Of a stretch of 64,000 nucleotides of DNA, positions 1 to 55,560 are shown in pieces. The notes under the pieces are model-generated. The model saw nothing but the letters and a program-made list of their open reading frames with translations, did no database searches and was not told the origin of the DNA. Both the position numbers and the translations under genes were made by a program. Source of the stretch: Octopus sinensis (Eukaryota). The DNA lies in the NCBI RefSeq assembly GCF_006345805.1, contig NC_043008.1:49724001-49788000 (forward strand), in the 5' to 3' direction. Numbering within the stretch: position 1 is the stretch's first letter; each line of letters begins with the position of its first letter.

Positions 1-1464
1 ATTTTTTATTTAATTATAGAAAATATACCAGCCTAAAATTATTTGTAACTGTTTTTACATATTAAAAACATTGTAACTTGGAGTAACTAAGCTATACCAA
101 TGCCTAACAGACAGAACACTCATCGTTGCACTTCTCACCTGCAAATTAGTTTGAAAAATTAATTCTAAATTTTAAAAAATGATCTCCCCTTTTCCTTGAG
201 AGTTGCCAACAATTGCAACTAGATTTTCATTTTCTTCCCCTACATAAAAAGGAAATTTCAATTAATTAAGAATTGTTTGTATGCATCAGGTAGTGTATCA
301 ACCCTTAGATTATACAATGTTTTAAACTCAGAACAATCTTTTTATATCCATTTTCATGTGTCAACATTGATTGGAAAAGTTGTCGAAAATTTCACTAATG
401 ACATGTGATTGACTGGAGATATTGATTTTACTGCTGTTTTTCTTTCTTCTGCTGACTACACAACTGTGGATTGAACCACTAAATGTAGAATAATGTGTCT
501 TTCCTAGGGATTGAATAGCAACAATAAAATTTGAACTGATAATATTGATCTTTGTTGTTGAGCATATTAATCTTACAATTATTATGCTTCTTTGGGTGTG
601 GGTGTGTGGGGTGTGGAGGGATGTGGTCTGTGTGTGTGTGTGTGTGTGTATGTGTGTGTGCTGTATACATGGATTTTAAAGATGAATGCAAGAAAAAGAA
701 AGAAAAAAGAAAAGAATAAAATCATTTTTAAAGGAAAATCTTACATCTTTCTAATTCAGAATCAACTGTTGAACAATCTGCCTGGCACTTAGCAACATAC
801 ATTTCATGAAGATGGTGATTTTGAACAAATGCCTAAAACAGAATGATTCAGCAAAGTTAACAACAGAGCAATATTTAAAATAATTTGATGATGATGATAA
901 CAATGGTGATCATGATGACTATCACGATGATGATGATCATCATTATCATCATCATGATCATGAGGTTATTCATGACAATGACAGTAAAACTTTTATAGTG
1001 TACAGCTTGTATTATGTTTCTCAATCCAAGATTGCTTTGAAGCTGTGTACACACACGTGCACACATTCATATATGAATATGTATACATATGTGTGTGTGT
1101 TTGTGTGTGTGTGTGCATGTGTGTGTATATGTGTGTACTCATGTATAAGTATTTATACACACACATATGCATGAATATACGTATATGTGTGTTAATGTTT
1201 CTCTATGTCTATGTTTATGTAAGGTCCTATATTTTTGTGTGCGTGTGTACATTGTTATGCAAGTATATGTATGTGCATATACATCTCTCTATATATATGT
1301 TTATGTATGTATATATATGTCCGGAGGTGGTTAGTGTTTGTATGTATGTGTGTATGTTTGTAATTAAACATTCCCTATTTAAACAGTGAATAACAAACTC
1401 TAAAATAACAGTTTGAAAACCACTTTTATCATTATCTGGTCACAGAAGCCTCCCTATAATTTTA

Positions 1465-1628
1465 GGCGCAGGTGTGGCTATGTGGTAAGAAGGTTGCTTC
1501 CCAACCACATGGTTCTGGGTTCAGTCCCACTGTGTGGCATCTTGGGCAAGTGTCTTCTACTATAGCCGAGGGCTGACCAAATGTTTGTTTGTGGATCTGG
1601 TGGACAAAAACTGGTATAAGTCTGTCAT
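1465..1628 (+). mobile_element. tRNA-derived SINE, 5' part (duplicated near 58601)
   Basis: A-box-like TGGCTATGTGGT, B-box-like GGTTCAGTCC, then the TTGGGCAAGTGTCTTC core seen in other SINE copies here; runs into (TA)n. Confidence 0.8.
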
Positions 1629-1629
1629 G

Positions 1630-1660
<31 letters not shown>

Positions 1661-1679
1661 TATATATATATAGATATAG

Positions 1680-1743
<64 letters not shown>

Positions 1744-1861
1744 ATATATATATATATTTGCGGATCTGGTAGACAAAAACTGGAATAAGTCCGTCATGTA
1801 TATATATATATATATACATGTATATATATATACATGTATATATATATATATATACATACAT

Positions 1862-1896
<35 letters not shown>

Positions 1897-1897
<1 letters not shown>

Positions 1898-3964
1898 CTT
1901 ATTATAAAAGGCAGATTTTATCTGCCTCCCTTTGTAACTTATAGAAATCTACAATATAGGATTTCTTCAATTACAATTTAGTTAGCATTTTTAAGAGTAG
2001 AATGCATCGGGTCATGCCAGGTCCAGTTTTTAAAATTTAAACTCCAATTAAGCAAAATTTACAGAAAACTCACATTCTGGTGTGTATGTCAAATGCTTTT
2101 CTTAATGTGGTTTACACCACACGCACACGCACACACACAGTGTGCAACGAATAAAATGAAAGTAAATAGCGACAGAGTGATTTGAGGAAGACTAAACAGA
2201 AAGTATTTAAACCACTACTCAAAAAATAAAAAAACACAGCAAACAGAAACAAATAAATACATAACGATTTACTCCTCACACAATTTCTTCAATTAGAGTT
2301 TACCTAAGATTTTTGAAAGTACTCCATTCGGTCATGCCATAATATATTTCTTTCAATTTCACAAAATTAAGACAAAATTCGAGAAAACTCAATATTTTAA
2401 CATTTCACTCTGAAAGCATTGGCACAGGAGTGGCTGTGTGGTATGTAGCTTGCTAACCAGCCACATGGTTCCGGGTTCAGTCCCTCTGCGTGGCATCTTG
2501 GGCAAGTGTCTTCTGCTATAGCCCCGGGCCGACCAATGCCTTGTGGGTGGATTTGGTAGACGGAAACTGAAAGAAGCCTGTCGTATATATGTATATATAT
2601 ATAAGTGTGTGTGTATATGTTTGTGTGTCTGTAGTTTGTCCCCCTAGCATTGCTTGACAACCGATGCTGGTGTGTTTACGTCCCCGTCACTTAGCGGTTC
2701 GGCAAAAGAGACTGATAGAATAAGTACTGGGCTTACAAAGAATAAGTCCCGGGGTCGATTTGCTCGACTAAAGGCGGTGCTCCAGCATGGCCGCAGTCAA
2801 ATGACTGAAACAAGTAAAAGAGTAAAAGAGTAAAGTACATGTGTGCATGCGTGAGTGTGTGTGTGTGTGTGTGTTTGATGGGTTGTGCGACACAGAAAGT
2901 GTGGTGTGTAAGTGAAGTGCTTTTGTTAGTGTGTGTAAAGAGACAGACAGAGTGAAAGACAGAAATAACTGAACTTTTTTTATTCACTTTTTGTAGTGAG
3001 TGACTGAGAGAGAAAAGAGAGAGAGAGGTTATGTATGCATATATGTATGTATGGCTTCAGTGACACACACACAAAAACACATACCTACGTACACCTAAAG
3101 CACGCACACACACACACACACAAGCGGAGCGCGAACTTCAAAATTTTGGTAGTATTAATTTGCGAGCGTACTTCTAAGCGTGCGTAATTGAAAGTTTTTA
3201 CTATGATATCATCACGTGCGAAAAAATTCGAAGGGTTTTGAACAATTGAGATACACATGTCACACCTGTATTGAAACCATTGCTAAGCTGCCGTAATTGC
3301 TTAATTAAGACTTTGTTTAAATTGAAAGGGGCAAATATGTGACGAGGTTGAAAAAAAATACCCCAGAAAAAAAAATGTACTGCTGGTATTTATATAATTC
3401 ACTACTATTTTGCTACAATGTCATGAAAAAGAAAAAATTTAGGTATGTAAATCGAATTCGCCACTCCCTTTTCCCCGTTCGCGTTTGTGTAAAAAAAATT
3501 ATTATTGAAGTTTTAAAAATTATTTACTTTGTTCAAAAAATATTAATATTAATTAATTTTCAAGAATTATTTAATTTTATTCTGTAAAATAGTAATTAAA
3601 TCATTTATCTATAAATCCGCGAGGTTGTTACTCAGGCACCTAGAATGGTAACCTTCAACTAACACTATCTCCTCCGAGACCCTGCGGCGCAAGTTGACCA
3701 AAATTGAGAGTATGGTAGAAGAAGGGTTGCTCTTCCTTCCGTAGAACATAAAATTCAAATCGGACCATGTTAACACCAAAAATTATTTACATCAAAAAGA
3801 TGCTTTTTTCTATGAAAATCCCTATTTTTTACGATTTTTTCACTGCTGTGTTGCCACTTTTCGGTGTATTTCGACCAGAAAAATGTTCACAAAATTTTTA
3901 ATTTTCAAAATTACAATTCCAGCGGGTTGAAACAAACCCGAGCAACGCCGGGCGATACTGCTAG
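1897..3964 (+). mobile_element. Non-autonomous Helitron-like element with a nested SINE
   Basis: Starts TC (TCTTATTATAAAAGGCAG) after an A. Ends with hairpin CCCG-AGCAACGC-CGGG (3937..3952) and CTAG (3961..3964) before a T. No TSD; sits in (TA)n. Confidence 0.8.
2421..2830 (+). mobile_element. Full-length tRNA-derived SINE (duplicate at 59583..59992)
   Basis: Pol III A/B boxes, core GGCAAGTGTCTTC, 3' body ending CCAGCATGGCCGCAGTCAAATGACTGAAACAAG, and (TAAAAGAG)n tail. Partial copies near 4370-4540, 27480-27600, 29360-29555. Confidence 0.85.
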
Positions 3965-3973
3965 TATATATAT

Positions 3974-4065
<92 letters not shown>

Positions 4066-4103
4066 CACACACACACACACACACACCACACACACACACA
4101 CAC

Positions 4104-4148
<45 letters not shown>

Positions 4149-5036
4149 TATATATATGTATATATGGACTGATAATATTGATCTTTGTTGTTGAGCATAT
4201 TAATCTTACAATTGTTATGCCTCTTTGTGTGTATGTGCGTGTTGGGGGTATGTACGTGTGCTGTATACAAGGATTTTAAAGATGAATGCAAGAAAAAGAA
4301 AGAAAAAAGAAAAGAATAAAATCATTTTTAAAGGAAAATATATGTATATATATATATGTATGTGTGTTTGTGTTTGTTTGTCCCCACCACCATTGCTTGA
4401 CAACTGTTGTTGTGCATTTACATCGCTATAAACTAGCAGGTTGGCAGAAGAGACCAACAGAATAAGAACCAAGCTTACAAAGAAAAATTCCAGGAGTCAA
4501 TTTCTTCAACTAAAAGCTGATTCTCCAGCATGGCCATAGTCAATTTAAACAAAGTCTTAATTAAGCAATTACGGCAGCTTAGCAATGGTTTCAATACAGG
4601 CGTGACATGTGTATCTCAATTGTTCAAAACCCTTCGAATTTTTTCGCACGTGATGATGCATATAGCTTTTATTGCATAGTTCAGAGATAAAACTTATACA
4701 AAGGGCATTAAGTTCAATTCCTTATAGATGAAAACTTTCAAGCTCTTTGCATCCAAGTTTATATTCAAATATACTGAATACCTGCAAAGAAAGCCAACTG
4801 TTACATAACTTTTGCTTTTCTGAAACAGCTGTCAAGTGAAGACATTACATAATTTCTTTATGTTTTTCTTTTTTTAGAATGTGTGCTATGCTATTGGTGT
4901 TATAAAATACCAGTTTAATCTTATTTCATTTAAAATAGAATAAATTTTGATAAAATAGGTATATTAGTGTGTGTGTGTGTGTATGTGTGCATGTGCATGC
5001 ATATGTGTGTATGTGTGTGTGTTTTAATTTACTTAC

Positions 5037-5233
5037 CTTATAAGCCTTAGGGTAAGGTAGCTTAATATAACTTGGTTTTACTTCATCATTCAATTTAAAT
5101 GTAATTTCAAAACATTTAGGATCTTTTGAAGCTGCCACTTCTCTTATGAATACCTTGTTAAGAATCATGCGAACTGAAGTGCGATACACCACAGTATGAC
5201 AAGCTTTTACATCCCATATTGTGGCATGAGTAT
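5037..5233 (-). CDS. Receptor gene, left copy: domain-1 exon (phase 1-0, 197 bp)
   Basis: Acceptor TTTTTTCTATTTGCCAG and donor AAG|GTAAGT. Open frame THATIWDVKACH...LPYPKAYK. Confidence 0.85.
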
Positions 5234-6383
5234 CTGGCAAATAGAAAAAAGGGAAACAAATTTATCTTTGTAACATCTAAAAACTTTTACAATACAATGT
5301 GAATAGTTAGTCAACTGTTCTATTCCAATATTCAGTTATTGGTTTCAATCAGATGCTGTGGCCGAGCTGGTGCACCAGTCTAGTTATTCAAAGAAAACTA
5401 GTAAAGAACATGGAAATTGTTTTTGAAAATAACATGAGAATATGAATAATCATGTAAATTTGGATTCTTTACTAATTTTTTCTAAAGAAAATTTTCTTTT
5501 CCCTTTTTGCATGTTTTTTTCATGAATCAAACTTAAATTTGAATCTAGGTAATTTTTTTAACAACATCCACTCTAATTTCATGACTGAGTGGTTGATGTT
5601 AAAGCAGCAGAAAGAGTTACTTAATCACTATGGTCAAAATTTGTCTACCATTGTCTTTTACATTTCAATGTCCTTTAGATCAATGCTAAAATGCAAAAAG
5701 AAAAATAAGAGAGAGAGAAGTCAAAAAGCTCTCAACAAAAGAATAATTTCTCAAATGAAACTTCACCACCTCTACATCATTATTATCCTTGCCATCATCA
5801 TCCTCGTAACCACCACCACTACCACCATAATCATCATCATCATCATCACCACCACCACCATAGCCATCATATGGATGGATGAATGGATGGATGGATGGAA
5901 AAGTGTTAAAGGTTTCTGTACAAATGTTATATAAATTTTTAAAATGGGTAAAAATGCACAGTTACATTAGGAGAAATATGGTAATATTTCATGACAAATT
6001 TAATTCATTTAAATCTATCCAATGTTATTAACTTACATAACTGGTTTTATCCATTGTAGTTGTGGATTTATAAAGTGAAAGTAGCTATAGTGTTTGCAAT
6101 ATAAAGGGTTAGAGTTTTGTAACTGGACACACAACTAGGGTAACAAGATAAAACACAAAATATGAAAGGATATGGCCTTTAGACTGTAAGGTTAGGAAGG
6201 GTACATTAGAAATTTGAGTGACAAGATAGGATTTTTAAATGAAGGACTGCCCTAGAGAGATTGATAGGCAGATACATGGAGAGAATCAGCAATATAGGTA
6301 GATAGATTAATAATTATTCTTTCATGTAAGACAAGGAGTGGTTAGTTGAACTTTGGTTTCAGGCTTGTCAAAAATATTTCAAA

Positions 6384-6570
6384 GTGCCTTCTTTAGTAAT
6401 CCATCATGATTACTAGCAACAATAACCAAATAGCCCTTATATTTTGGAGTGCCTACTTTGGTAATCCATCAAGATTACTAGCAACAACAACCAAATAGCC
6501 CTTATATTTTGGAGTGCCTACTTTGGTAATCCATCAAGATTACTAGCAACAACAACCAAATAGCCCTTAT
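6384..6570 (+). repeat. 65-bp minisatellite, about 2.9 copies (duplicate near 63552..63738)
   Basis: CTTT(A/G)GTAATCCATCA.GATTACTAGCAAC... starts at 6391, 6456 and 6521. Confidence 0.95.
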
Positions 6571-7084
6571 GATAAATACAAAGACACAAACATAGATACA
6601 CACGTTCATATTTACTCATACACACATACATATATTCTCATACACACACACATACATAATGACTTGCACCCATGCACACATGAGTTAATGGTAGATTGTA
6701 TATATCAAAAACTATGTGAATATATGTGTGTGTGCGCGTGTGCATGTGTGTCCATACAAGTGTATCCTAAGTTGCCTGAAATTGTTTGTCAATTATTCCA
6801 GCAAGGCTTTTATTTCATAATAAATTTTCTTCCTTTATTTGTTCATAGATGTTACATGGTAGAATCTGAGCATTTGTAAAATGGAAAAATCTTTAAATTG
6901 GGTGGTTCCATTTCAGTATAAGTTACTATGTGTTCCTGTTTCTTTCTTTCTTTTTTTCTCCCCTTATTTCTTGCTTGTGCATCATCAATTGTCCACAAAG
7001 TGATAATCCCATCAGTCTGATGCAGTTTCTACAGTTTGTTATGGCATAAATTGAGTATAAGAAGTTGCAAGAGAAATTTTATTT

Positions 7085-8668: not shown

Positions 8669-8723
8669 TTGTAAAATGGATTAATATGAAGACTAACATA
8701 CTTGAAAATGATAGCAGTAACAT
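8669..8723 (-). CDS. Receptor gene, left copy: first coding exon (signal peptide)
   Basis: Kozak-like ACCACCATG, MLLLSFSSMLVFILIHFT, phase-1 donor A|GTAAGT. Joins exon 5233 in frame (...HFT-N-THA/TIW), with a plausible -3/-1 cleavage site after THA. Confidence 0.75.
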
Positions 8724-23857: not shown

Positions 23858-24164
23858 TCAAATTGCCGTGATGTAATACGCTGATCCTGGATTTTGGTTT
23901 TCATATGGACCCCCAGGGTTTTGCTGTAGAGAGGATAATTGAAATCCAATTTCTTGGTCATAAACTGAGTCTGGATTTTGCGCGGCACACCGGATATTCT
24001 CTTCAGGAAAGGTTTCATAGACTTCATAATCTTGGCCAATTTCATCAACTTGATCAGCTTGGTCGATTTCATCAACTTTATCAGCTTGATTGACTTGGTT
24101 GACTTGACAGACTTGATGAGTTGGCATGTAATCTTTGCTTCTTTTGTTTTTGAGTATATTATAT
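23858..24164 (-). CDS. Receptor gene, right copy: terminal exon (cytoplasmic tail)
   Basis: Acceptor TATTGTCTATTGCAG. A phase-2 start completes the Arg codon from the TM exon. Reads YNILKNKRSKDYMPT...YENQNPGSAYYITAI-stop. Confidence 0.85.
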
Positions 24165-25299
24165 CTGCAATAGACAATATATGTGTGGTGAAAGGTATGT
24201 GTGTGGGTGTGTGCACATGCACACCTGTGTGCGTATATGTCTGTCTGTCTGTATGTATGTACAACTAGATGAAAACATCTCTCTCTTTCTCTCTCCCCAT
24301 TTCTCACTGATTTTTTTGCCCTGTGCATACAAACACCCACTTATATGTATGCATGCATATTTGTGTAAGTGTGCTTGTGTATGGGAATGCACGCTTGTTT
24401 GTGAGTATATATATATATATACAAAGCCCAATATGCCCATCATGAATACCCATCTGATAAGGGTACACCAGATCTATGCATCACAACCATATGTGTACAG
24501 CATGTTGATCTCATCAACATAAACAATACATGACCTTGCAGGTAAGGTCCAGTTAGAATTTTCTTCAGGTTGAGTAGCCTATCCTGCTCAAAAGATCCCC
24601 AAATAAGGTTTTTTTAAGGATGAACAAAACACCCATAGTTCCGGCGTGAATTATTCAAGCACCAAAGAATTCCCCTCAACACATGGCTATGATGCTCCCC
24701 CATTACTTCTGCTCATGATTAGAGATGCACATATTGTCAGCCACAAAAGCAAATAATGCTCAAGTAGTTAAGATCAAGCAACTGACGAGCAAATCTGTGG
24801 TATTGAGCAGAATATTTGCTGTAGTCCATCCTTTATAGCAAGGCAAAACAACATACATTTTATGATGCACAAAGGAAACGTTAGATCCTATTTTTTGATT
24901 ATCTGGTTCCTACTCAGCACTAGAGTAATGTGAAGTGAAGTGCTTTGCTCAAAAACACCACACACCACCCAATCTGGGAATTGAACCCATCATCTGACAA
25001 TCATGAATGCAACACACTAACCACTAGGCCATGCCTGATTGAAATCTTGAAAACTATTTCTGAGACATGCTCTGCAACAGCATCCTTTCTGTACATGGTG
25101 CATATCTTCCTGTAGGTTTCTGCTACTTTTCTTGTCTTGATTTTTAAAAATAAAACAGCGTGAGGTGTTGATAATTTTTGTTTTCAGTCTCCATTTTCAG
25201 AGTAGTCCTGAGCATGCAAAATACATCCTGTTTTCTCACAAGTTCACAGACTGAAGTTAGATAATCTATAATGATGTAAAGCACAAAATATCGCAAGGG

Positions 25300-25886
25300 A
25301 AGTGCTGCAAACCACCACAAACAACCTCCAAAGCAGGACTTTGCCTAAAGAAGATTATGTTTTCAGTTAGGTGGAACTGGAAAGATGTCATCTTTTATAC
25401 GCTACTTTGGACAGATAGGGCTATCAATTCTGATGTGTACCATAACCAGCTGGACAAATTAAATGCAGTGATCCACCAGAAGCATCCAGCACTTGCTAAT
25501 CATTAGGGTAATGTCTTTCATTAGGACAATGCCAGACTGCACACTTCTATGTAGACATGACAGAATTTACTAGGGATTGGCTGGGTTAATTTGCCACACC
25601 CTCAATATTCAAATATTGAACTGGTGCCTTCAGATTTCCACCTGTTTAAGTTTCTTCAAAATTCATTAAATGAACAGACCTTCAACTCTGAGGAGAATGT
25701 AAAAATTCATCATGAAAAGTTTTTATGCTAGTAAAGTCAAGAAATTCATCGAACAAGGTATAATGGATATTGGAAGATACTGGAACAAAAATATGATTAT
25801 ATCATTGATTGAATAAATCATTTTGTTTAAAACTTGTGCCTAATTTTTGATTAAAACTAGGCACAAGTTTTTTGGCCAATCCAATA
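25300..25886 (+). mobile_element. Decayed mariner element 3' half with right TIR
   Basis: PKKIMFSVRWNWK, FH*DNARLHTS and HPQYSN.ELVPSDFHLF motifs. TIR AAGTTTTTTGGCCAATCCAATA at about 25865-25886. Confidence 0.8.
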
Positions 25887-26524
25887 TCTATATCTATATA
25901 TATAATATAACATGATATGATATGATATAATATAATATAATATAATAATAATGTAATATAATATAATATAATATAATATATATTCATATATTGCTGTCTG
26001 GTTTATGCATTGTCATCCTTTTTCTGCTGACTGCCTTTGAGGTCAGTCACATCTGTTCTGTCTCACCACCTGGCTGGTTAAAATTTTCCCTTTCCTTTTC
26101 CCTTGAGCTAGCTTACTTACACTGTCTAATAGGAGAAAGACTCTGCTTTGTTTTATTTTTGTTGTAATTGAATAATTATTTTCCTTTGGTCCATTGTATA
26201 TGTATAATTCTATTTCTTGTTACATTCGTTTGATAGTTGAAAGACCCTGTCTGTTTGTCATTTCCTTGTGTTTGTATATGTACATTCATTTGCCTTGCTC
26301 AGGGGCTTAATGACTTCAGCTTAAGCCCTTGACCCAACTGGTTTCAAGTAGTATTAAAGAGAATCAGACCAAACTATATGGACATTCTAGACTCCAATTG
26401 AAGAAGCAATTGGCTGCGAATGATCTGTGTATCTTGTTTTGTACTGTTTGCTGTTGTTGTACTATCATCCTTTTCCTGCAAATTTAACTTTGATGATTTC
26501 CGTTTGTTGTGTTTATTACCTTTG

Positions 26525-26560
<36 letters not shown>

Positions 26561-26921
26561 CGGGAAGCTTTATGAAAATAAACAAAAGACGAAGGCAGGT
26601 GGAAAACAAACGAACAATTGTATTAGTATGGCGCTCAGGAAATATAAATAAAACAAGTCTTTAACGTTTCGAGCCTACGCTCTTCACAGAAAGATACATA
26701 GAGAGAGAAAAACACAGAAAGAAGGAGAGAAAAAAAATGCGTGCAGTAGCTAACGAATCAACATGATGCATCCTACACACATGCACATACTTTGGTAATG
26801 TCCCATTTCCTGTTCTTTAAACAAACACACACACAAATTCAAACACATATATGCACATAAACATAAGCCCACACACATATAAACACAAAAAGGAAATAGA
26901 TTAATAATATACAAGCTTTAC

Positions 26922-26985
26922 CTGATACAGAGTATGATGATGATGATGATCAAAAATGACGTGAGGACTGCAAAGAGGCCAATAA
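26922..26985 (-). CDS. Receptor gene: transmembrane exon (64 bp, phase 1-2)
   Basis: Acceptor TTTTCTTCTTTAG and donor AG|GTAAAG. Encodes V-IGLFAVLTSFLIIIIIILCI-R. Phases match both neighbouring exons. Confidence 0.9.
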
Positions 26986-27597
26986 CTAAAGAAGAAAACA
27001 ATAAGATACTCAATTAACCAACAGTTTATGTAAACTTAAACGGAACCTAATATATGTAACTTAATAATCAAAAGCAAAATTATCTTCATTAAAAATTACT
27101 AATATAATTAAAAGGAAATCTATAACTTTTTGTGATAATTGCTGTCAAAATAAAAATTGATAAAGAATTGAATGGAGACATGCTTTAGGAAGAGAGTCAG
27201 GTTATTGGTAAGTATGGAGCTTAACCCTCGGTATGTTTTGTCTTATTAGACCACTGCAGTAAAGTATAGTGATATCTGTTCTAACTAGATCTCAGATTCT
27301 TTCTGTTACATTGTACCATTAGAATTTTTAAACAGTTTGTTGAAGTAGTCTTTATTCCTTTTGAAGATTATTATTAATACAAATGATTTTTCTTTCAATA
27401 ATGAGTGTAAAATTTTTAACACTTAAATTCCTATACTATGACACTATACTACAAGTAAATAAACAAATTTTCACATTGTTCCAGGTTCCACGTTCAGTCC
27501 CACTACATTCCACCTTGGGCAAGTGTCTCTTACTATCGTGTCGGGCCAACCAAAACCTTACGAGTGGATTTGATAGATGGAAACTGAAAGAAGCCTG

Positions 27598-27651
<54 letters not shown>

Positions 27652-27663
27652 ATGATGATGATA

Positions 27664-29291
27664 CAGTTGCGGCCAAAATGTTCAGAACAGCATTGTTTTC
27701 AACAGAAAAGTAGGTATAAGTTTTTATCAAAGTTGTTTTATATTCTGTAATTTTCACACACAATAAATACAATATTAATTGTTATTGTCTGAGATTTTGG
27801 TGTAATTTGAGCGGATAATACAAAAGTTATGGATGATTTAGTGATTTACTGCAAAACCCATGGCGGCCAAAATGATCAGAACGGTTGCTTTTACTCCGTG
27901 TTTTAGTATATTTAACTGGCGAACTCTAATGTTTTGAATTTGTTTACGTGCTGGTTCGTTTATTAAACATTAGTAAGAATATCTGCAGTGTACTTTGTTA
28001 ATATAATGCCACTTACTCCATTACCAATTCGTCAGCAGATTATTAAGCTTCGCAAGAAGGATAATTTAAGTATTGGGTCTATTGCAAAGATTGTTAACAA
28101 GTCAAAAAGTGTTTTTCATGGTATTCTTAAGGTCTTCGATGATTGTGGTTCATGTAAAGCAAGAAAGTCTACAGGTAGGCCAAGAAAAACGACCAAGAGA
28201 GAAGATTGTGCTATGGTAAAGTTGGTTAAAAAGGACAGATTTAAAACTGCTGCTGCTGTTTCTCGGGAAATGAGCATTGTACTGAAGAAAACGTTATGTC
28301 GAAAAACTGTGTTTCATCATTTAGTTGAACATAACCTACAAGCAAGATCACCTGCAGTGAAGCCACTGATCAGCTCCAAAAATAAAAAGTGTCGTCTTAC
28401 CTTTGCAACCGAACATGTGTTGTGGTCTCAAGAAAAATGGCAAACGGTGCATTTCAGTGATGAATCTAAGTTTATGTTATTTGGCTCAGATGGGAAAAGG
28501 TACGTTCATTGAAAAGTAGGTGAAAAATTGTCGCCTAAATGCCTTAAGACTGTGTTAAATTCAGTGGAGGAAGTGTCTTGATTTGGGGAATGATATCTGG
28601 AGATGGTGTGGGCTCTTTGGTGCGATTACATGGAAAGGTAAATGCAGGAGTTTATAGACAACTTGTAAAAGATCATGTCTTGCCTGTGCTGAGAAATTCA
28701 ACTAAGCGACCACCCATATTCATGCAGGACAATGCCCCATGTCACAAGGCTAAGGTGGTCATGAACTTCCTCAAGGCTGAAAAGGTTATTATTATGGATT
28801 GGCCTGCTCAAAGCCCAGATCTCAATCCTATTGAAAATGTGTGGAATATTCTAGGAGAAAGTTTGAAAGCCAGAAATCCTAAAACAACCGAGCAATTATG
28901 GAATGCCCTTCAGGAAGAATGGAATAAGATCACCTAGCAAGAAATTGAAAATTTTATTTCCTCATGCAGTCGAAGATGTCAAAGTGTGATTGAAGCTAAA
29001 GGGCTTCACACTAAATATTAAATAATTCCAGTATTCTCTGTCATTTTTGATTATTTTGTTATGTTTTCAACCGTTCTGATAATTTTGCCCGCCATAGGTT
29101 TTGCAGTAAATCACTAAATCATCCATACCTTTTGTATTATCCTCTCAAATTACATCAAAATCTCAGACAATAACAATTAATATTGTATTTATTGTCTGTG
29201 AAAATTGTAGAACATAAAACAATTTTGTTAAAAACTAATACCTACTTTTCTGGCAAAAACAATGCCGTTCTGAACATTTTCGCTGCAAAAG
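27664..29291 (+). mobile_element. Full-length Tc1-family transposon (DD34E), inactivated
   Basis: TA flanks and TIRs of about 225 bp with inner/outer direct repeats. Transposase 28006..29021 has HFSDESKF, FMQDNAPCH and SPDLNPIENVW, with stops at 28510 and 28935 and a frameshift. Confidence 0.95.
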
Positions 29292-29300
29292 TATATATAT

Positions 29301-29333
<33 letters not shown>

Positions 29334-29608
29334 GGTGCATGTGTGTCTTTGTACATTTCCAGCCACTGCTTGACAACTGGTATTGGTGTATTTACATGCC
29401 CATAACTTAATTCAGCAAAACACACCGATAGAATAAGTATCAGGCTTAAAGGATATTAAGTACTGAGGTCGTTTAGTTTGACTAGAATTCTTCAAGGTGG
29501 TGCCCCCAGCATGGCTACAATCTAATGACTGAAACAAGTAAAAGGTAAAAGGTAAAAGAATTCAATAATAAATCTCTGAGCGAGATATAAACAGTAGCAG
29601 CATGACAT

Positions 29609-29958
29609 CGTGAAGTATATTTGCCACCTAAATGTGGCTAACCCTTAAGGGTTGATGCTACTGACTCGAGATCAGTGACTTTTCGTCACAGGAAAAAGTA
29701 TATATTTGCATTGAGAATCATTTCCCATTGCCAACCGGTGGTTGTCATAAGCTGATGACAGGTCAATACCCAGAAACTCGGGTTCATATGTATCACGTCA
29801 GGCTGGAGATGGGAATGATGACTTCCCTTTGCAAATACTGATAGAGCACAGATAGTGTGTCAATAGCCAGCTGGAGGAGATGATTTTCTGGGGCTACAAA
29901 CTACAGTAGCATCGACCCTTAAGGGTTAACCACATTTGGGTGGCAAATATACTTCATG
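29609..29958. mobile_element. MITE with ~55-bp TIRs
   Basis: 29609..29663 (CGTGAAGTATATTTGCCACCTAAATGTGGCTAACCCTTAAGGGTTGATGCTACTG) is the reverse complement of 29904..29958 with about 4 mismatches. Confidence 0.85.
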
Positions 29959-30660
29959 TAAAAGAATTCATTCTGAAGAAAATGAGAAACTGTCTAATGT
30001 AAAGGAGAAAACTCTAATCCTTTCTCAATCAATTTGTTCTTTCACAGAATCATTACAAAGCTGGACTTTGACTTGGACAGTTTTCAGTATGATATTAAGA
30101 GTTAATTAGATATTTTGGTGTGGGTGTGTTACTACATTAAGTTTGTTAACCTCACTTAACTCTCTGTCCTTCATTCAGATATTCTTAGTGCAGTTATTAA
30201 ACTGCAAAACATCAGCTTAAGAAGGACAAATTTATTCAACTGAATTCTTCATTATTTCCAACATTAATTAAAACAAAGACTATTTGAATAGTAATGTGGT
30301 AACAAAAGGTTAAACTCATTCAGATATTCTTGATGCAGTTATTAAATTGTCATTAAATTTAGAGTTGAGTTTTGAGAAAAGCCAGTTTCTATTGCTATCA
30401 AACAATGATATGATGTGAAACAGATTTTCAACACTTGACATTAAGTGGATACCATTCCAATGATAGTCAGAGAATAATTAAAGAGTCTCTAACTTCCTAA
30501 TATCCTCTCAAGGCTTCAGTTAGTTGGCGCAGTGCTATAATGAATGACATCTGCTCTTGGTGTTGTGCAATGGGACTGAAATCAGAGCGATGAGGTTGCC
30601 AAATGAAAACTTGATAAACAAAAATTATGAGATGATACATGAAAAAATGAAAATAATTAC

Positions 30661-30702
30661 CTATTATTATGGAGACATTTGTTTCATTCCTGTGTAGTTT
30701 CT
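30661..30702 (-). CDS. Receptor gene: stalk exon (42 bp, phase 1-1)
   Basis: Acceptor TCTACTTTTCAG and donor G|GTAATT. Encodes E-KLHRNETNVSIII with N-x-T/S sequons, leading into the TM segment. Confidence 0.85.
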
Positions 30703-31099
30703 CTGAAAAGTAGACAAAATATTTATTAGAAATTGGCAAAAATATCTCTGAAACACTCTAACACAATTATTGATCTGAGAAGTTCAATCCTGTTTCATGT
30801 AAAGATTGTCCATTTCAATCATTGATGCCACCAATTTGGGAGAACCATTCAGTTTATGATAAATTCTTGGAAACAAGAAATAGTTGATGACAACATCAAA
30901 TGATGAACAGATAGCTAACATCATCATCGGCATCATTTTGATATCAACTTTTCAATTCTTGCATGGAACAGATGGAATTTATTGAGGCAGGTTTTCTATG
31001 ACTAGATGCTCTTCCAGTTACCAACATACGTGTGTGTTTGTGTGTGTGTATCCAAATATATTTACACACAGATGTGTATGTATGTGTGTTTGTATAAGA

Positions 31100-34090
31100 T
31101 GGCTGCTTATAAATGCCAAAACCTTCCCAGGCGAAGAATGTACCACAGGCTGGTAGTTAGTGACTTCTGGGTAAGGGCTAAATGGTTGCCCAGAAAACGA
31201 CCAGCAAGGAGAAGAAGGGTCTGGAGACTTATAGATCTCGCAAATGGACAGAGATTTAGAGACATATTACTCGAAGCCTTTGACGAAATAGAAGGGGATA
31301 TAGCTTCACATGGTATAGAAGACAACTGGAGGTTCCTACGGGACAACCTGCTAAGGGCCACCGACCAGATCTGTGGATGGTGCAAAGTCCCCTCTCGACC
31401 CAAAATAACGTGGTGGTGGAACAATGTTATTGACAGGGCTATTAGACAAAAGAAACAGGCTTGGAAGAACGGTGGTAGCAGGGAAGTGTATCAGACTGCC
31501 AGATGGGAAGCTAGGAGGTAGGTTTATTTAGCCAGAGGGGAAGCAGATAAGAAAAAATTGGCCAATGTTCTGTGCTGCAAGGACGAAAGACTTGAGGTAT
31601 TTCGTGTTGTAAGACAGTGTGTGAGAGAGAATTGTGATGTGGTAGGAGAGAAATGTGTTTGCATGGATGATGATTCACTTGCGCTAAATGAGGATGCAAA
31701 GAGAGAGGTTTGGAGATGCCACTATGAAAGGTTCCTGAATAAAGAAAATGAATGGGAGAAAGAGAGTCTGCCGAATGTCGACCCAACAGAGGGATCAGCT
31801 ATCCGAGTTTACAGTAACTTGTAGATAAAGCAATTAGAAGTATGAAGACAGGGAAAGCCCCAGGCCCATCGGGAATTACTGCAGAGATGCTCAAAATATC
31901 TTGCAATGTCGGCTATTGCCTAGTCACCCATATAGTTAACCAGGTGATACACGAAGGACTCATACCCAATGACTGGTGTAGCAGAATAATAGTTAACTGC
32001 GACAAAGGTAAAGGTGACTCTTTAGATACAAATAATTACAGAGGTATCAGTTGGATCAGGTAATGAAGGTCACGGAGAGGGTCATAGCCCAACTAATTAG
32101 GGAGAGAGTCAGTCTAAATGAGATGCAGTTTGGGTTCGTGCCAGGGAAAAGCACCACTGATGCCATATTTCTGGTAAGACAGCTGCAGGAGAAGTACCTA
32201 GCTAAAGATAAGCCCCTGTACCTGGCTTTCGTTGACATGGAGAAAGCCTTTGACAGGGTGCCCCGATCCCTTATCTGGTGGTCAATGAAGAAACTAGGGA
32301 TAGATGAATGGTTAGTGAGAGCGGTGCAAGCCATGTACAGGGACGCTGTAAGTAAGGTAAGGGTTGGTAATGAGTACACTGAAGAATTCAGGGTAGATGT
32401 AGGGGTCCACCAAGGGTCAGCCCTCAGCCCCCTCCTATTTATCATAGTACTCCAGGCAATAACGGAGGAATTCAAGACAGGATGCCCCTGGGAGCTCCTC
32501 TATGCTGATGACCTTGCTCTAATTGCTGAGTCACTATTAGAACTAGAGGAGAAGTTTCAGGCGTGGAAACAAGGATTAAAATTGAAGGGCCTTAGAGTCA
32601 ACCTAGCTAAAACCAAAGTCCTAATAAGTAGGAAGGCAGGTAAACCACAAAACCCTTCAGGTGAATGGCCCTGCTTGATCCGTAGAAAAGGCGTAGGTAG
32701 AAACTCCATAAGATGTACCCAGTGTAAGCTATGGACACATAGGAGGTGCAGCAATATCAAAGGGAGGCTAACTGGGAAGATAGATTTTGTGTGTGGCAAA
32801 TGCTCAGATGCTATGAACCCTGAAACTGTGCAGAGAACAGCTTCTGTCACATTCCTGGGAGAAAAACTAGAAGTAGTTGATAGCTTCCGTTACCTGGGTG
32901 ATCAAGTCAGTAGTGGAGGAGGGTGCACTGAAAGTGTAGCTGCTAGAATAAGAATATCTTGGTCAAAGTTCAATGAGCTCTTACCTCTGCTGGTGACAAA
33001 GGGCCTCTCGCTCATAGTAAAATGTAGACTGTATGACGCATGCGTACGAACAGCCATGCTACATGGCAGTGAAACATGGGCTGTGACTGCTGAGGACATG
33101 TGTAAGCTCGCAAGGAATGAAGCCAGTATGATCTGATGGACGTGTACTGTCAGTGTGCATACTTGACAGAGTGTAAGTACCTTGAGAGAAATGTTGGACC
33201 TAAGAAGCATCAGATGAGGTGTGCAAGAGAGGCATCTACGCTGGTATGTTCATGTGGCGAGAATGAATGTGGACAGCTGTGTGATAAAATCCCACACCCT
33301 AGCGGTTGAGGGAACCTGCGGAAGAGGTAGACCCAGGAAGACCTGGGATGAAGTGGTGAAGCACCGCCTTCAAACTTTAGGCCTCACCGAGGAAATGACT
33401 AGTGACCAAGACTTTTGGAAATATGCTGTGCTTGAGAAGACCCAGCAAGCCAAATGAGACCATAATCTCGTGGCCTATGCCAGGGGCGTTACCAGCCCTC
33501 TTATGCGTACCTTTTCCTTCTTTGGACAGTAAAACTCTGCTTGCAAAGACCTGTTGAGGCAAGTGAAATCAAAGATTTAAAATCAGAAATCAAAATCAAA
33601 TTTGATGACTGGCATCCCTGCTAGCGGGGTGCAAAAAATGTCATCATTGACAGAGCGGCTAACTGGCTTCCATGCCAGTGGCACTTAAAAGGCACCATTC
33701 GAGCGTGATCATTACCAGTGTCGCCTTAAAGAACATCATCCGAGTGTGATCTTTGCCAGAGCGACTATCTGGCCTCCATGCCGGTGGCATGTAAAAGACA
33801 CCATTCGCGCGTGATCGTTACCAGCATCGCCTTACTGGCACCTGTGCTGGTGGCATGTGTAAAAGATTCGAGTGAGGTCGTTGCCAGTACCACCTGACTG
33901 GCCCCATGCCGGTGGCACGTAAAAGCACCCACTACACTCTCGGAGTGGTTGGTGTTAGGAAGGGCATCCAGCTGTAGAAACTCTGGCAGATCAAGATTGA
34001 AACCTGGTGCAGCCATCTGGTTCGCCAGCCCTCAGTCATTCGTCCAACCCATGCTAGCATGGAAAGCAGATGCTAAACGATGATGATGAT
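31100..34090 (+). mobile_element. RTE-clade LINE, 5'-truncated, RT with stops and frameshifts
   Basis: ORF 32051..33136 has QFGFVPGKSTTDAIF, FVDMEKAFDRVP, QGSALSPLLF and YADD. The 3' UTR carries GCCGGTGGCACGTAAAAGCACC-type repeats and a (GAT)n tail. Confidence 0.97.
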
Positions 34091-34177
34091 GAATTGAATG
34101 TATGTGTGTGTCCATATATACTGATGCTGATAACTGGCATTTAAAATGAACAATATTTAAGTATGACAATTTCAGAC

Positions 34178-34289
34178 CTTTTGTTATTCCTTTTGTTATT
34201 CGAGAAAATTTTGTCACAGAGAAATTCTGATATTTTCTTTCTACATTTGTTTTGAATTGATACTCCGAGTAATTGCTGATCACACTTAT
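34178..34289 (-). CDS. Receptor gene: domain-4 second exon (112 bp, phase 0-1)
   Basis: Acceptor CTATAATTTCAG and weak donor G|GTCTGA. Reads ISVISNYSEYQFKTNVERKYQNFSVTKFSRITKGITK. Phases fit both neighbours. Confidence 0.6.
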
Positions 34290-34393
34290 CTGAAATTATA
34301 GATTTGAAACATCAAATTCACTTTCATAAAACATGCAATGTGCTTGCCTATAATATTTAAATATTTTAAAATATGTATAGAAAATATTTGTAC

Positions 34394-34623
34394 TTCATTG
34401 ATTCTCAGAAGTTTATCCAAAAAGTGGAATTTTAATTTCATGATTTCATTTTTCTCATATGTCTTCAGATTAAAATATTTGATATAAGTATTTCCATAAG
34501 GATAAACATATTTCCATTGTAAATTTCTAGTGAAAGAAGAAGATAGAGTGTCTTGAATTATTTCCACATCGAAATTTCTTTCATGTTCTTCAGGAGAAAT
34601 AACTTTCAACAACCAATTTTTGC
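34394..34623 (-). CDS. Receptor gene: domain-4 first exon (230 bp, phase 1-0)
   Basis: Acceptor TTTATATTTCAG. Reads S-KNWLLKVISPEE...DKLLRINE. The 3' boundary (GAA|GTACAA) is a weak donor; a GC donor at 34348 is an alternative. Confidence 0.75.
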
Positions 34624-34859
34624 CTGAAATATAAATTTAGAAAATAAGTCTTTTAGTGTGCGTGCTTATGTATGTATACACACGCACACACATGCACACA
34701 CACAAACACACACACATTTTGTGTATATATACAGCGACTTCCTAAAAGTCTATACTCAATTTTCATTTCTTTTTAGATTTAACCCATTAAAAATAATCTG
34801 TAAACAAAATAAAATTTGTTCTAAGTGCTACTGGAAGTTTAGGAGAGAGTTTTAAAACA

Positions 34860-35780: not shown

Positions 35781-35886
35781 TTTGAAATCTAAGCATCTTT
35801 TTCCTTAAATTTCCTTAATTTCACATTTCTAATGCTGCCTTGAATCATTACAAAAGGGTTAACTCCCTTCTAATAGCTGTACCACA

Positions 35887-37720: not shown

Positions 37721-37741
37721 AGTTGTTCAATGAAATCTTAC

Positions 37742-37835
37742 TTTTCTGTAGTTTACATGAATATTTAGCTGGGATTGTCTTATGTATGTTAACACAACCG
37801 TATTCTTCTTTAGTATGTATTCTTGTCAAGACAAT
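37742..37835 (-). CDS. Receptor gene: domain-3 second exon (94 bp, phase 0-1)
   Basis: Acceptor ATGATTTTTCAG and donor A|GTAAGA. IVLTRIHTKEEYGCVNIHKTIPAKYSCKLQK has the same length and Y-x-C...C spacing as exon 49163..49256. Confidence 0.85.
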
Positions 37836-49162: not shown

Positions 49163-49256
49163 CACTTCTCAATGAACACTCATGGTAAGGATTACTTTGT
49201 TTAAGAAGATAAATACAGGAATATATTTTGGAAGTTTCCATGTTTTTCAGTTTGAT
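49163..49256 (-). CDS. Receptor gene: domain-2 second exon (94 bp, phase 0-1)
   Basis: Acceptor TTTTTTCTTTTACTTTAG and donor G|GTAAGT. Reads IKLKNMETSKIYSCIYLLKQSNPYHECSLRS. Confidence 0.88.
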
Positions 49257-55545: not shown

Positions 55546-55560
55546 GAAGCCACTAAAATA

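What the first reader, a model, noticed from the sequence alone, without database searches (positions are those of the whole stretch)
5037..5233. The domain-1 exon is hypervariable between two otherwise near-identical gene copies, with only non-synonymous changes
Seen in sequence: compared with 62206..62402 there are six substitutions (5080, 5147, 5152, 5153, 5180, 5203) changing five codons (V/E, I/V, V/K, T/S, A/V) and none silent, about 3% divergence. In the other ~6.6 kb I found by eye only about five non-microsatellite substitutions, two of them within 50 bp of this exon. The unplaced candidate exon at 6037 is identical in both copies. Inference: diversifying or balancing selection on the membrane-distal, probably ligand-binding domain, as in immune or allorecognition receptors, or a gene-conversion patch from a third paralogue. 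Six changes alone are too few to prove dN/dS > 1; the clustering is the stronger signal.
Basis: partly seen in the sequence, partly recalled or inferred. Interest (0 to 1): 0.75.

Follow-up and report, generated by a model that had tools for sequence, protein, structure and literature searches.

The report
Divergent exon patch in converted octopus paralogues
Two neighbouring octopus genes of unknown function are almost identical over 17 kb apart from a few short patches of differences, one of which covers the exon for the outermost part of the protein; this looks like patchy DNA copying between gene copies, not proven selection for diversity.

Summary
The six substitutions fall in five codons, all change the amino acid, and they are strongly clustered within the 6.8 kb visible in the window.

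The exon is real. It is exon 2 of two annotated, uncharacterised tandem paralogues of Octopus sinensis: LOC115217968 (copy A) and LOC115218112 (copy B). It encodes the N-terminal, membrane-distal beta-sandwich module of an octopus-restricted type I membrane protein.

Fetching the neighbouring DNA changes the picture. A and B are old paralogues, only 76-96% identical in their 3' halves. Their 5' 17.1 kb has been homogenised. Within that block there are kilobases with no differences and a few short patches of 1-4% divergence. Two purely intronic patches are as dense as the exon-2 patch (6 substitutions in 124 bp each).

The six-to-zero excess of amino-acid changes is not significant (P about 0.24). 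In another family member, exon 2 gives dN/dS of about 0.5.

The best reading is a mosaic produced by gene conversion between the two loci, with a short heterologous patch in copy B. No donor for that patch was found. Selection that protects exon 2 from homogenisation, or an assembly artefact, remain possible. Interest is modest.

The parts
5037..5233 (-). Exon 2 of copy A (LOC115217968). It is 197 nt: 2 nt that complete codon N19, then 65 codons. It encodes THATIWDVKACHTVVYRTSVRMILNKVFIREVAASKDPKCFEITFKLNDEVKPSYIKLPYPKAYK, which forms most of the N-terminal beta-sandwich module.
   Evidence: Splice sites were read. The sequence is identical to residues 20-84 of P0001/P0022.
62206..62402 (-). 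Exon 2 of copy B (LOC115218112). It differs from copy A at six bases and five residues (A29V, T37S, V46K, I48V, V70E).
   Evidence: The sequence is identical to residues 20-84 of P0020.
8669..8723 (-). Exon 1 of copy A. It encodes the signal peptide MLLLSFSSMLVFILIHFT plus one base, and its donor is gtaagt. Copy B's exon 1 lies beyond the right end of the window (L002 10001-10055).
745..832 (-). Exon 3 of copy A (AFVQNHHLHEMYVAKCQADCSTVDSELER + 1 nt). It is identical to exon 3 of copy B at 57881-57968.
57881..57968 (-). Exon 3 of copy B.
4967..5022 (.). An imperfect (GT)n microsatellite in intron 2, starting 15 bp from the exon-2 donor site. It carries the two further A/B differences at 4999 and 5014, so the divergent patch spans 4999-5203 (205 bp).
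1..6832 (-). The part of the homogenised block that is visible for copy A. The whole block is L001 9716-26794, which runs from window position 9008 leftwards past the window start.
49056..64000 (-). The part of the homogenised block that is visible for copy B. It is 99.2-99.3% identical to copy A, with 47 simple-repeat-masked substitutions in 15,959 columns over the whole 17.1-kb block. They are concentrated at the block's left edge (beyond the window's right end) and in three patches.
50659..52274 (-). Divergent patch 2, inside a LINE fragment in intron 3 of copy B. It has 16 substitutions in 1.6 kb, including 6 in 86 bp at 50659-50744. Copy B carries the unique state at 11 of 14 sites that could be polarised.
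49384..49650 (-). Divergent patch 3 in intron 4 of copy B, with 8 substitutions in 270 bp (6 in 94 bp). Here copy A is nearly identical to the O. vulgaris orthologue of copy B, and copy B shares 3 states with O. bimaculoides.
50179..50385 (-). Exon 4 of copy B, identical to exon 4 of copy A.
49161..49256 (-). Exon 5 of copy B. It marks the right boundary of the homogenised block. Its three differences from copy A (2N:1S) match the O. vulgaris orthologue, so this is copy B's own sequence.
38758..45741 (-). A tandem array in copy B. Its unit is about 750-840 bp, containing exon 6 (237 nt) and 5-9 copies of an 81-bp minisatellite. Exon 6 is present about 9-10 times here, against once in copy A.
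23873..37832 (-). The diverged 3' half of gene B: exon 7 at about 37740-37832, exon 8 at about 34379-34624, exon 9 at 34191-34292, the transmembrane exon at 26924-26989 and the tail exon at 23873-24165. These are 61-96% identical in protein to copy A.

Best explanation
The finding is exon 2 of two tandem paralogous genes of Octopus sinensis, at CM016870.1:49.72-49.79 Mb on the minus strand. Copy A is LOC115217968 and copy B is LOC115218112. Both encode octopus-restricted type I membrane glycoproteins: a signal peptide, about four beta-sandwich modules, a transmembrane helix and a short tail. Exon 2 encodes most of the outermost module.

A and B are old duplicates, and the B-type gene already exists in O. 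vulgaris. Their 5' 17 kb, from about 230-290 bp upstream of exon 1 (the substitution-free stretch starts 233 bp upstream) to exon 5, has been homogenised by non-allelic recombination (interlocus gene conversion), with transfers in both directions. The result is a mosaic. Stretches of 3.75, 9.85 and 1.0 kb have 0-3 differences. Between them lie short patches of 1-4% divergence.

The exon-2 cluster (window 4999-5203) is one of these patches. Five of its six exonic changes are unique derived states of copy B. It is most likely either a short heterologous tract, copied from an unsampled close copy or allele (for example by template switching during repair), or a segment left out of the last round of homogenisation.

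Shown: the gene models, the mosaic, the polarity and the intronic patches. Inferred: the recombinational origin of the exon-2 patch.

That all six changes alter amino acids is compatible with the weak constraint on this exon. It evolves at about the intron rate between O. vulgaris and O. bimaculoides.
For: Gene identity and organism:
- Exhaustive HMMER with the exon peptide found P0001 (98% identity at residues 19-84).
- P0001/P0022 carry the copy A allele and P0020 the copy B allele.
- L001 positions 1-18723 equal the window at 100% identity.

Old paralogy:
- A and B are only 76-96% identical downstream of exon 5, and 97-99% upstream.
- The O. vulgaris locus L003 is orthologous to B by its flanks (98-99.5%) and shares the exon-6/81-bp array.

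Mosaic pattern:
- The simple-repeat-masked substitutions in the 17.1-kb block fall at L001 9737-9767 (8), 13521-13725 (8, the finding), 23573-25191 (16) and 26200-26773 (12).
- Only 3 substitutions lie in the remaining ~14.6 kb of the block (L001 9768-13520, 13726-23572 and 25192-26199).
- Windows of 124 bp holding 6 substitutions occur in exon 2, in an intronic LINE and in intron 4.

Relationships change along the block:
- At the left edge and in exon 5, B matches O. vulgaris.
- Between about L001 12.7 and 25.3 kb, both A and B are far from O. vulgaris.
- In intron 4, A is 0.3-0.7% from O. vulgaris, while B differs and shares states with O. bimaculoides.

Polarity: both outgroups agree with A at 4 exon-2 sites and with B at 1.

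Weak constraint on exon 2: O. vulgaris versus O. bimaculoides differ by 5.1% in the exon against 3.6-5.0% in its flanks.
Against: No donor for the 57-bp copy B haplotype was found. No annotated family member has the intervening residues CHTVVYR or VRMILNK, and there is no third copy in the window or within 10 kb of either gene.

Inside the homogenised part, 6 of 35 substitutions fall in the 3.5% that is coding, all of them in exon 2 (P 0.0012). This is also what selection against homogenisation would produce.

In the exon-2 and LINE patches combined, copy B carries more unique changes than copy A (16 versus 4, P 0.006). A simple 'escaped island' evolving at equal rates does not predict this.

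Both alleles come from a single assembly. No reads were available.
Confidence: 0.5

Rival explanations
1. Selection protects exon 2 from homogenisation. Under this reading, the outermost module of A and B has functionally different residues, and conversion tracts that erase them are removed by selection. The result is an exon 'island' in homogenised introns, as in primate L/M opsin genes. A stronger form would be diversifying selection on a recognition surface.
For: - All six exonic changes alter amino acids.
- Exons are enriched for differences inside the homogenised block, 6 of 35 in 3.5% of the sequence, P 0.0012.
- Exon 2 is the least conserved, or nearly the least conserved, region in most orthologue-like pairs of the family.
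- O. vulgaris versus O. bimaculoides exon 2 gives 9N:1S.
- The opsin precedent is PMC3213168.
Against: - 6N:0S has P about 0.24 under neutrality. Pooled with the 9N:1S pair, P is 0.12-0.20.
- Two equally dense patches lie entirely in introns, one of them in a LINE fragment.
- The patch extends 38 bp into intron 2.
- Exon-2 omega is about 0.5 in P0011/P0010 and 0.51-0.64 in deep comparisons.
- The five residues are not among the most variable positions of the module (ranks 8-46 of 66 for four of them; the fifth, residue 70, was mis-indexed and not ranked).
- An old protected difference should also have synonymous differences, and there are none.
Confidence: 0.2
2. The cluster is an assembly or polishing artefact, or a mix of haplotypes. 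In a PacBio and Illumina assembly of a heterozygous animal, reads from another allele or paralogue could have been used to polish copy B. That would write short foreign patches into one of two near-identical 17-kb repeats.
For: - The patches are short, and mostly unique to copy B (5:1 in exon 2, 11:3 in the LINE patch).
- One patch lies in a multi-copy LINE, where mis-mapping is expected.
- Both alleles are known only from this one assembly and the RefSeq models derived from it.
Against: - The copy B changes have a natural-looking spectrum, about 15 transitions to 8 transversions (my hand count from the site lists, not a scripted result), and keep the reading frame open.
- Copy B's LINE-patch states do not match the three other copies of that element available here.
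- In intron 4, three copy B states match O. bimaculoides, so they are real ancestral bases.
- Few non-repeat indels separate the copies.
- A and B are certainly separate loci with different 3' structures.
Confidence: 0.13
3. The cluster is new mutation in copy B. Error-prone synthesis during the repair event that copied A-type sequence into B, or instability next to the (GT)n repeat, could have produced several substitutions at once.
For: - Five derived changes lie within 57 bp of the recipient copy, including the adjacent pair at 5152/5153.
- The patch starts in the (GT)n tract 15 bp from the exon.
- From general knowledge, not tested here: mitotic gene conversion and break-induced replication are mutagenic.
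Against: - The density needed (up to 9% over 57 bp, and about 0.15% over the whole tract) is far above reported repair-associated mutation rates (general knowledge).
- Many other microsatellites in the block have no neighbouring cluster.
- The intron-4 patch contains ancestral states, so it is not made of new mutations.
Confidence: 0.1

Closest known systems
Concerted evolution of tandem paralogues by interlocus gene conversion, for example the primate X-linked L/M opsin arrays (PMC3213168) and globin or growth-hormone clusters (general knowledge)
   Same: These are tandem duplicates in which long tracts, mostly intronic, are nearly identical while short segments stay different. Relationships also change along the gene. 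Islands of difference can coincide with an exon.
   Different: Here two islands of equal density are purely intronic, the exon island has no synonymous differences, and no functional meaning of the five residues is known. In opsins the protected sites are known spectral-tuning residues.
Patchwork gene conversion that generates diversity in immune and recognition receptor families (MHC class I/II, KIR; allorecognition genes such as Hydractinia Alr and Botryllus fuhc). This comparison rests on general knowledge.
   Same: A tandem family of single-pass membrane proteins whose membrane-distal module evolves fastest, with exon-level duplication and exchange among paralogues.
   Different: There are no Ig or other recognised domains. 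There are no population data showing polymorphism. dN/dS is not above 1 with the sampling available. The function is unknown.
PLAT/LH2 beta-sandwich domains (C-terminal domain of pancreatic lipases, N-terminal domain of lipoxygenases)
   Same: The best structural resemblance of module 1 is to the PLAT domain of pancreatic lipase-related protein 2: Foldseek probability 0.99, TM-score 0.51, about 110 residues in a sandwich of seven to eight strands. The full-length model also gives local hits to lipase and lipoxygenase PLAT domains.
   Different: The E-values are only 0.02-0.1, there is no Pfam PLAT match, and sequence identity is 10-15%. The octopus module is extracellular with four conserved cysteines. 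This is a fold resemblance only.

Membership tests
Interlocus gene-conversion mosaic between tandem paralogues | Two paralogous loci in the same orientation that are clearly diverged outside the tract | tested here: met
   A and B lie 57.1 kb apart on the minus strand. Their 3' halves are 76-96% identical and their upstream regions 97-99%.
Interlocus gene-conversion mosaic between tandem paralogues | Tracts of near-identity with sharp boundaries, and substitutions distributed non-randomly | tested here: met
   Stretches of 3.75, 9.85 and 1.0 kb have 0, 3 and 0 substitutions, lying between patches of 1-4% divergence. Permutation P is about 5e-6 within the window.
Interlocus gene-conversion mosaic between tandem paralogues | Relationships to an orthologue or outgroup change along the sequence | tested here: met
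   B matches O. vulgaris at the left edge and in exon 5. A and B cluster together against O. vulgaris in exons 2-4. A matches O. vulgaris against B in intron 4.
Interlocus gene-conversion mosaic between tandem paralogues | An identified donor sequence for the divergent patch in exon 2 | tested here: not met
   None of the 18 database family clusters (plus the further cluster members and isoforms read) has the copy B haplotype or its intervening residues. There is no third copy in the window or in the flanks. Whole-genome DNA could not be searched.
Positively or diversifyingly selected recognition domain | dN/dS significantly above 1 in the domain | tested here: inconclusive
   A versus B gives 6N:0S (P 0.24). 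O. vulgaris versus O. bimaculoides gives 9N:1S (omega 2.5). Pooled P is 0.12-0.20. Other comparisons give omega of 0.5-0.64.
Positively or diversifyingly selected recognition domain | Excess divergence confined to the coding sequence, relative to neutral flanks | tested here: not met
   Equal clusters occur in intron 3 (LINE) and intron 4. The patch runs into intron 2. In deep comparisons the exon-2 flanks are as diverged (16-20%) as the exon (23%).
Positively or diversifyingly selected recognition domain | High allelic polymorphism in populations | not testable with these tools
   No reads or resequencing data were available. Exact look-ups of the exon ORFs found nothing in the protein collection.
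Immunoglobulin-superfamily receptor | Ig or Ig-like domain detectable by sequence or fold | tested here: not met
   There is no Pfam hit in the ectodomain and no PDB sequence hit. Ig-receptor fold hits have probability of 0.23 or less.
PLAT/LH2 domain | Match to the Pfam PLAT profile, or a significant fold match | tested here: inconclusive
   There is no Pfam match. Foldseek gives probability 0.99-1.0 and TM-score 0.51, but E-values of 0.04-0.1.
Type I single-pass membrane protein | N-terminal signal peptide, a single transmembrane helix near the C-terminus, and a cytoplasmic tail | tested here: met
   The protein has MLLLSFSSMLVFILIHFT at its N-terminus and VIGLSAVLMSFLIIIIIILCI at residues 447-467 of P0022. 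The model shows helix 2-18 followed by an all-beta ectodomain. Copy B keeps its transmembrane and tail exons. The assignment rests on sequence inspection, not on a dedicated predictor.

The most novel reading that the evidence does not exclude
The outermost module of this octopus-only receptor family may be a recognition surface, and its differences between tandem copies may be actively kept, or generated, against a background of gene conversion. That would make the locus a cephalopod counterpart of conversion-driven polymorphic receptor clusters. One candidate role is the unexplained self-recognition or contact chemosensing of octopus skin and suckers.
Probability: 0.1. Interest if true: 0.7.

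Novelty: new member of a known kind. Interest (0 to 1): 0.3.

Why it matters
Taken at face value, the finding suggested a hypervariable ligand-binding exon in duplicated receptors, which is a hallmark of immune or allorecognition systems. With the neighbouring DNA and two other octopus species included, it becomes an ordinary though clear case of mosaic concerted evolution between tandem paralogues. This shows how a 6.8-kb view can mislead.

Some points remain useful:
- It documents an uncharacterised gene family known only from Octopus species. The family forms tandem clusters, evolves quickly overall (ectodomain dN/dS about 0.3-0.6), and has exon-level duplications and a roughly 9-fold exon amplification in one copy.
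- Its N-terminal module is the least conserved part.
- The locus is a good test bed for asking whether gene conversion builds or erases diversity in cephalopod lineage-specific genes.
- If the five residue differences turn out to be maintained in populations, the family would deserve functional study.

Tried and rejected
1. Pfam search on the exon peptide found nothing.

2. The word-indexed homologue search with the 66-residue peptide found nothing. This was a false negative. The exhaustive HMMER search then found P0001 and P0002.

3. A search for a third exon copy in the window by blastn and tblastn found none.

4. Exact look-ups of the read-through ORFs (104 and 80 aa, both alleles) and of six transposon ORFs found none in the collection. 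No read-level or independent support could therefore be obtained.

5. Rfam on the whole window found nothing.

6. 'The patch is a relic of copy B's own old exon 2' was rejected. The O. vulgaris orthologue of B differs from both A and B at 45 of 197 bases and shares only one of the copy B states.

7. 'The patch was copied from an annotated paralogue' was rejected. Some paralogues have V29, S37 and E70, and K46/V48 under one alignment. But the residues in between differ completely, and the K46/V48 match disappears in the MAFFT alignment.

8. 'Copy B is a pseudogene under relaxed constraint' was rejected as an explanation. Its transmembrane and tail exons are intact, and relaxed constraint cannot make an exon diverge faster than its introns.

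9. RNA-editing-like or deaminase-like signatures were considered. The six changes are a mix of A/T, T/C, AC/TT, T/A and G/A, with no strand-coordinated pattern.

10. GC-biased conversion was considered. There is no weak-to-strong bias among the copy B changes (by inspection of the changes).

11. Look-ups for P0001 and P0004 failed because only the longest isoform is on record. P0022, P0024 and P0025 were used instead.

12. The O. vulgaris orthologue of copy A could not be reached. It is not annotated, and lies about 40 kb beyond locus L003.

13. Literature searches found nothing on this family.

Full report
**1. The observation**

The window is AT-rich animal DNA, 28-47% G+C, full of TA/CA microsatellites and retroelement ORFs. 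A self-comparison shows that 1-6832 repeats at 57137-64000 with 98.7% identity.

A global alignment gives 36 substitution columns and 9 indel events. All but eight of the substitutions lie inside TA/CA/GT repeats. The eight are 1262, 3901 and the six reported at 5080, 5147, 5152, 5153, 5180 and 5203. Two more, 4999 and 5014, lie in an imperfect (GT)n tract 15-70 bp from the exon.

On the minus strand, 5233->5037 is bounded by ttgccag|AT and AAG|gtaagt. In frame, the six changes alter five codons (A/V, T/S, V/K, I/V, V/E) and none is silent.

After masking simple repeats, 6 of 11 substitutions fall in 124 bp of 5,917 columns. The permutation P is about 5e-6 and the binomial P is 5e-7.

**2. What the exon is**

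Pfam and the word-indexed protein search found nothing for the 66-residue peptide. An exhaustive HMMER search of 1.84 billion representatives found two proteins:
- P0001: 508 aa, 98% identical at residues 19-84.
- P0002: 188 aa, with two tandem copies of the same module at 36% identity.

P0001 is isoform X2 of LOC115217968 of Octopus sinensis. Its 90% cluster also holds LOC115218112 (P0020). P0001 and P0022 carry the copy A allele. P0020 carries the copy B allele exactly.

The locus fetched for P0022 overlaps the window at 100% identity. The window is therefore CM016870.1:49,724,001-49,788,000 of assembly GCA_006345805.1.

Mapping the proteins gives these gene models, all on the minus strand:
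- Copy A: exon 1 (signal peptide) at 8723-8669, exon 2 at 5233-5037, exon 3 at 832-745. The rest lies left of the window.
- Copy B: exon 2 at 62402-62206, exon 3 at 57968-57881, exon 4 at 50385-50179, exon 5 at 49256-49161.
- Copy B, continued: exon 6 at 45741-45505, repeated about nine more times in the array 38758-45739.
- Copy B, continued: exons 7-9 near 37.8 and 34.6-34.2 kb, a transmembrane exon at 26989-26924, and a tail exon at 24165-23873.

The 'candidate exon at 6037' is in no annotated isoform.

**3. The protein family**

The family has 18 clusters in the database. All are from O. sinensis, O. vulgaris or O. bimaculoides. Several lie on the same chromosome, and none has a Pfam domain. 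A profile of the family finds no solved structure by sequence.

AlphaFold2 on the family alignment gives an all-beta ectodomain of about four sandwich modules, with mean pLDDT 70. Module 1 alone reaches pLDDT 84.

Foldseek finds nothing at E <= 0.001. The best resemblance is to the PLAT/LH2 domain of pancreatic lipase-related proteins, with probability 0.99 and TM-score 0.51.

Isoform X1 has a transmembrane helix and a tail, so the protein is type I. Exon 2 is therefore indeed the membrane-distal end.

**4. The two copies are not simply near-identical**

With both loci in hand (L001 for A, L002 for B), the near-identical block is 17.1 kb. It runs L001 9716-26794 against L002 9716-26835, from about 230-290 bp upstream of exon 1 (the substitution-free stretch starts 233 bp upstream) to exon 5.

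Identity outside the block:

| Region | Simple-repeat-masked divergence or identity |
|---|---|
| Upstream of the block | 1.1% and 2.7% divergence |
| Exon-6 region | 2.4% divergence |
| Further downstream | 92-93%, 84% and 76% identity |

The proteins differ by 4-39% in exons 7 to the last. Copy B has the exon-6 amplification and copy A does not.

The O. vulgaris locus for P0006 (L003) is the orthologue of copy B. Its flanks are 98-99.5% identical to L002, and it has the same array. A and B are therefore old paralogues whose 5' part was homogenised later.

**5. The block is a mosaic**

The simple-repeat-masked substitutions in the block are distributed as follows, in L001 coordinates:

| L001 interval | Substitutions | Content |
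|---|---|---|
| 9737-9767 | 8 | Left edge of the block |
| 9768-13520 | 0 | 3.75 kb, includes exon 1 |
| 13521-13725 | 8 | The finding |
| 13726-23572 | 3 | 9.85 kb, includes exon 3 |
| 23573-25191 | 16 | LINE fragment in intron 3 |
| 25192-26199 | 0 | Includes exon 4 |
| 26200-26773 | 12 | Intron 4 and exon 5 |

Windows of 124 bp holding six substitutions occur three times inside the block. One is in exon 2, one in the LINE (window 50659-50744) and one in intron 4 (window 49384-49477). Clustering is thus a property of the block, not of the exon.

Relationships also switch along the block:
- At the left edge and in exon 5, copy B matches O. vulgaris.
- Between about 12.7 and 25.3 kb, both A and B are far from O. 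vulgaris. Exon 2 differs at 45 of 197 bases, and its flanks are 16-20% diverged.
- In intron 4, copy A is 0.3-0.7% from O. vulgaris. Copy B differs there, and shares three states with O. bimaculoides.

Sequence has moved between the loci in both directions and more than once. This is the signature of interlocus gene conversion.

**6. Origin of the exon-2 patch**

Both outgroups agree with copy A at four of the six sites, with copy B at one (5080), and with neither at one. Copy B therefore carries four or five derived changes within 57 bp.

The patch is not a remnant of copy B's own old exon, because the O. vulgaris and O. bimaculoides type is 23% different.

No annotated paralogue can be the donor. 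Several share V29, S37 and E70, but the residues in between are completely different.

In the LINE patch, copy B's states are also unique: 11 against 3 for copy A, and they do not match three other copies of that element.

The exon-2 patch is therefore most simply a short heterologous tract from a close copy or allele that I could not sample, or a segment missed by the last homogenisation. I could not tell these two apart.

**7. Selection**

Nei-Gojobori counts for exon 2:

| Comparison | Result |
|---|---|
| A versus B | 6N:0S over 153.8 N and 41.2 S sites |
| A versus O. vulgaris | pN 0.195, pS 0.337, omega 0.51 |
| O. vulgaris versus O. bimaculoides | 9N:1S, omega 2.5 |

All six changes being non-synonymous has P 0.24 under neutrality. 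Pooled with the 9N:1S pair, P is 0.12-0.20. Compared with exons 5-9 of A versus B (16.5N:9.5S), Fisher's P is 0.15.

Wider sampling:
- P0011 versus P0010 gives exon-2 omega of about 0.52, and about 0.56 for the whole ectodomain.
- P0005 versus P0025 gives 1N:1S for exon 2.

Between O. vulgaris and O. bimaculoides, exon 2 diverges at 5.1%, the same rate as its introns (3.6-5.0%). Exon 6, by contrast, diverges at 2% against flanks above 9%. Exon 2 is the least conserved, or nearly the least conserved, region in most orthologue-like pairs.

The exon is therefore weakly constrained. Positive selection is neither shown nor excluded.

One point favours some role for selection. Inside the homogenised part, 6 of 35 substitutions lie in the 3.5% that is coding (P 0.0012). 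This is the pattern seen where selection keeps exon differences against conversion, as in gibbon L/M opsins (PMC3213168).

**8. Verdict**

The exon does encode the membrane-distal module, and the clustering is real. However, it is one of several patches in a gene-conversion mosaic between two old tandem paralogues, and the excess of amino-acid changes is not significant.

An assembly or haplotype artefact cannot be excluded without reads. Against it, the ancestral states in the intron-4 patch and the natural-looking substitution spectrum (about 15 transitions to 8 transversions, my hand count from the site lists) suggest real sequence.

The genes are already annotated, as uncharacterised, and the mechanism is a known one. 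Novelty and interest are modest.

Noticed in passing
window 38758-45741: Gene B contains a higher-order tandem array. Its unit is about 750-840 bp, holding exon 6 (237 nt) and 5-9 copies of an 81-bp minisatellite. Exon 6 therefore occurs about 9-10 times here, against once in gene A. The RefSeq model of B (P0020, 306 aa) simply stops by reading into the array. The O. vulgaris orthologue (L003 30.5-40.6 kb) has about 10 kb of the 81-bp repeat but only two exon-6 copies.
   Followed up: partly
window 23873-24165 (-) and L001 42160-42534: The last exon is used in two reading frames. Isoforms with the transmembrane exon read it as the cytoplasmic tail (RYNILKNK...). Isoforms that skip the transmembrane exon (P0001, and P0003 in O. 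bimaculoides) read it in another frame as a K/I-rich tail (DIIYSKTK..IKLIKLM..). Both frames are open in copy A, copy B and O. bimaculoides. This suggests conserved membrane-bound and secreted forms.
   Followed up: partly
window 44860-45468 (+); L003 36946-41542 (-): Long ORFs run through the 81-bp minisatellite (...KSKHRIQKGENSYFEYVKIFATAFLKY... repeated). In O. vulgaris a 1,023-residue 'gene' is called on the strand opposite to the family gene across this repeat. It is probably a spurious annotation.
   Followed up: no
window 52565-55326 (-): A nearly intact LINE lies inside intron 3 of gene B. It has an endonuclease ORF of 274 aa (Exo_endo_phos) and a reverse-transcriptase ORF of 567 aa (RVT_1). 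It falls within the 17-kb homogenised block, so gene A carries the same insertion.
   Followed up: partly
window 12593-13609, 32403-33728, 50581-51895; 27988-28512: Three copies of one retroelement fragment, 84-87% identical, are present. The longest ORF (32051-33136) matches RVT_1 and has a weak, below-cutoff match to a PHD finger. One copy lies in intron 3 of gene B and hosts divergent patch 2. There is also a Tc1/mariner transposase remnant (HTH_Tnp_Tc3_2).
   Followed up: partly
proteins P0002/P0026, P0004/P0005, P0013/P0015 (other loci of the family): Family members differ by whole-module duplications. LOC115218105 has two tandem exon-2/3 modules. LOC115217897 and its O. bimaculoides relative have the exon-3/4 module twice. 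Others have insertions after module 1. Exon-level duplication is common in this family.
   Followed up: no
Its phase does not fit exon 2. The real first coding exon is at 8723-8669.
   Followed up: yes
O. bimaculoides P0003 (UniRef A0A0L8ID31): UniRef names this orthologue 'Vitellogenin domain-containing protein'. Scans here of its longer isoform (P0024) and of three other family proteins found no Pfam domain in the ectodomain, so the name appears unsupported.
   Followed up: partly
window 4200-4560, 2392-2690, 1465-1640 and the matching positions in copy B: SINE-like elements recur in the introns. They share a core (...ggccatgctgg...) and end in CA/TA microsatellites. They account for much of the microsatellite length variation between the two copies.
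   Followed up: no
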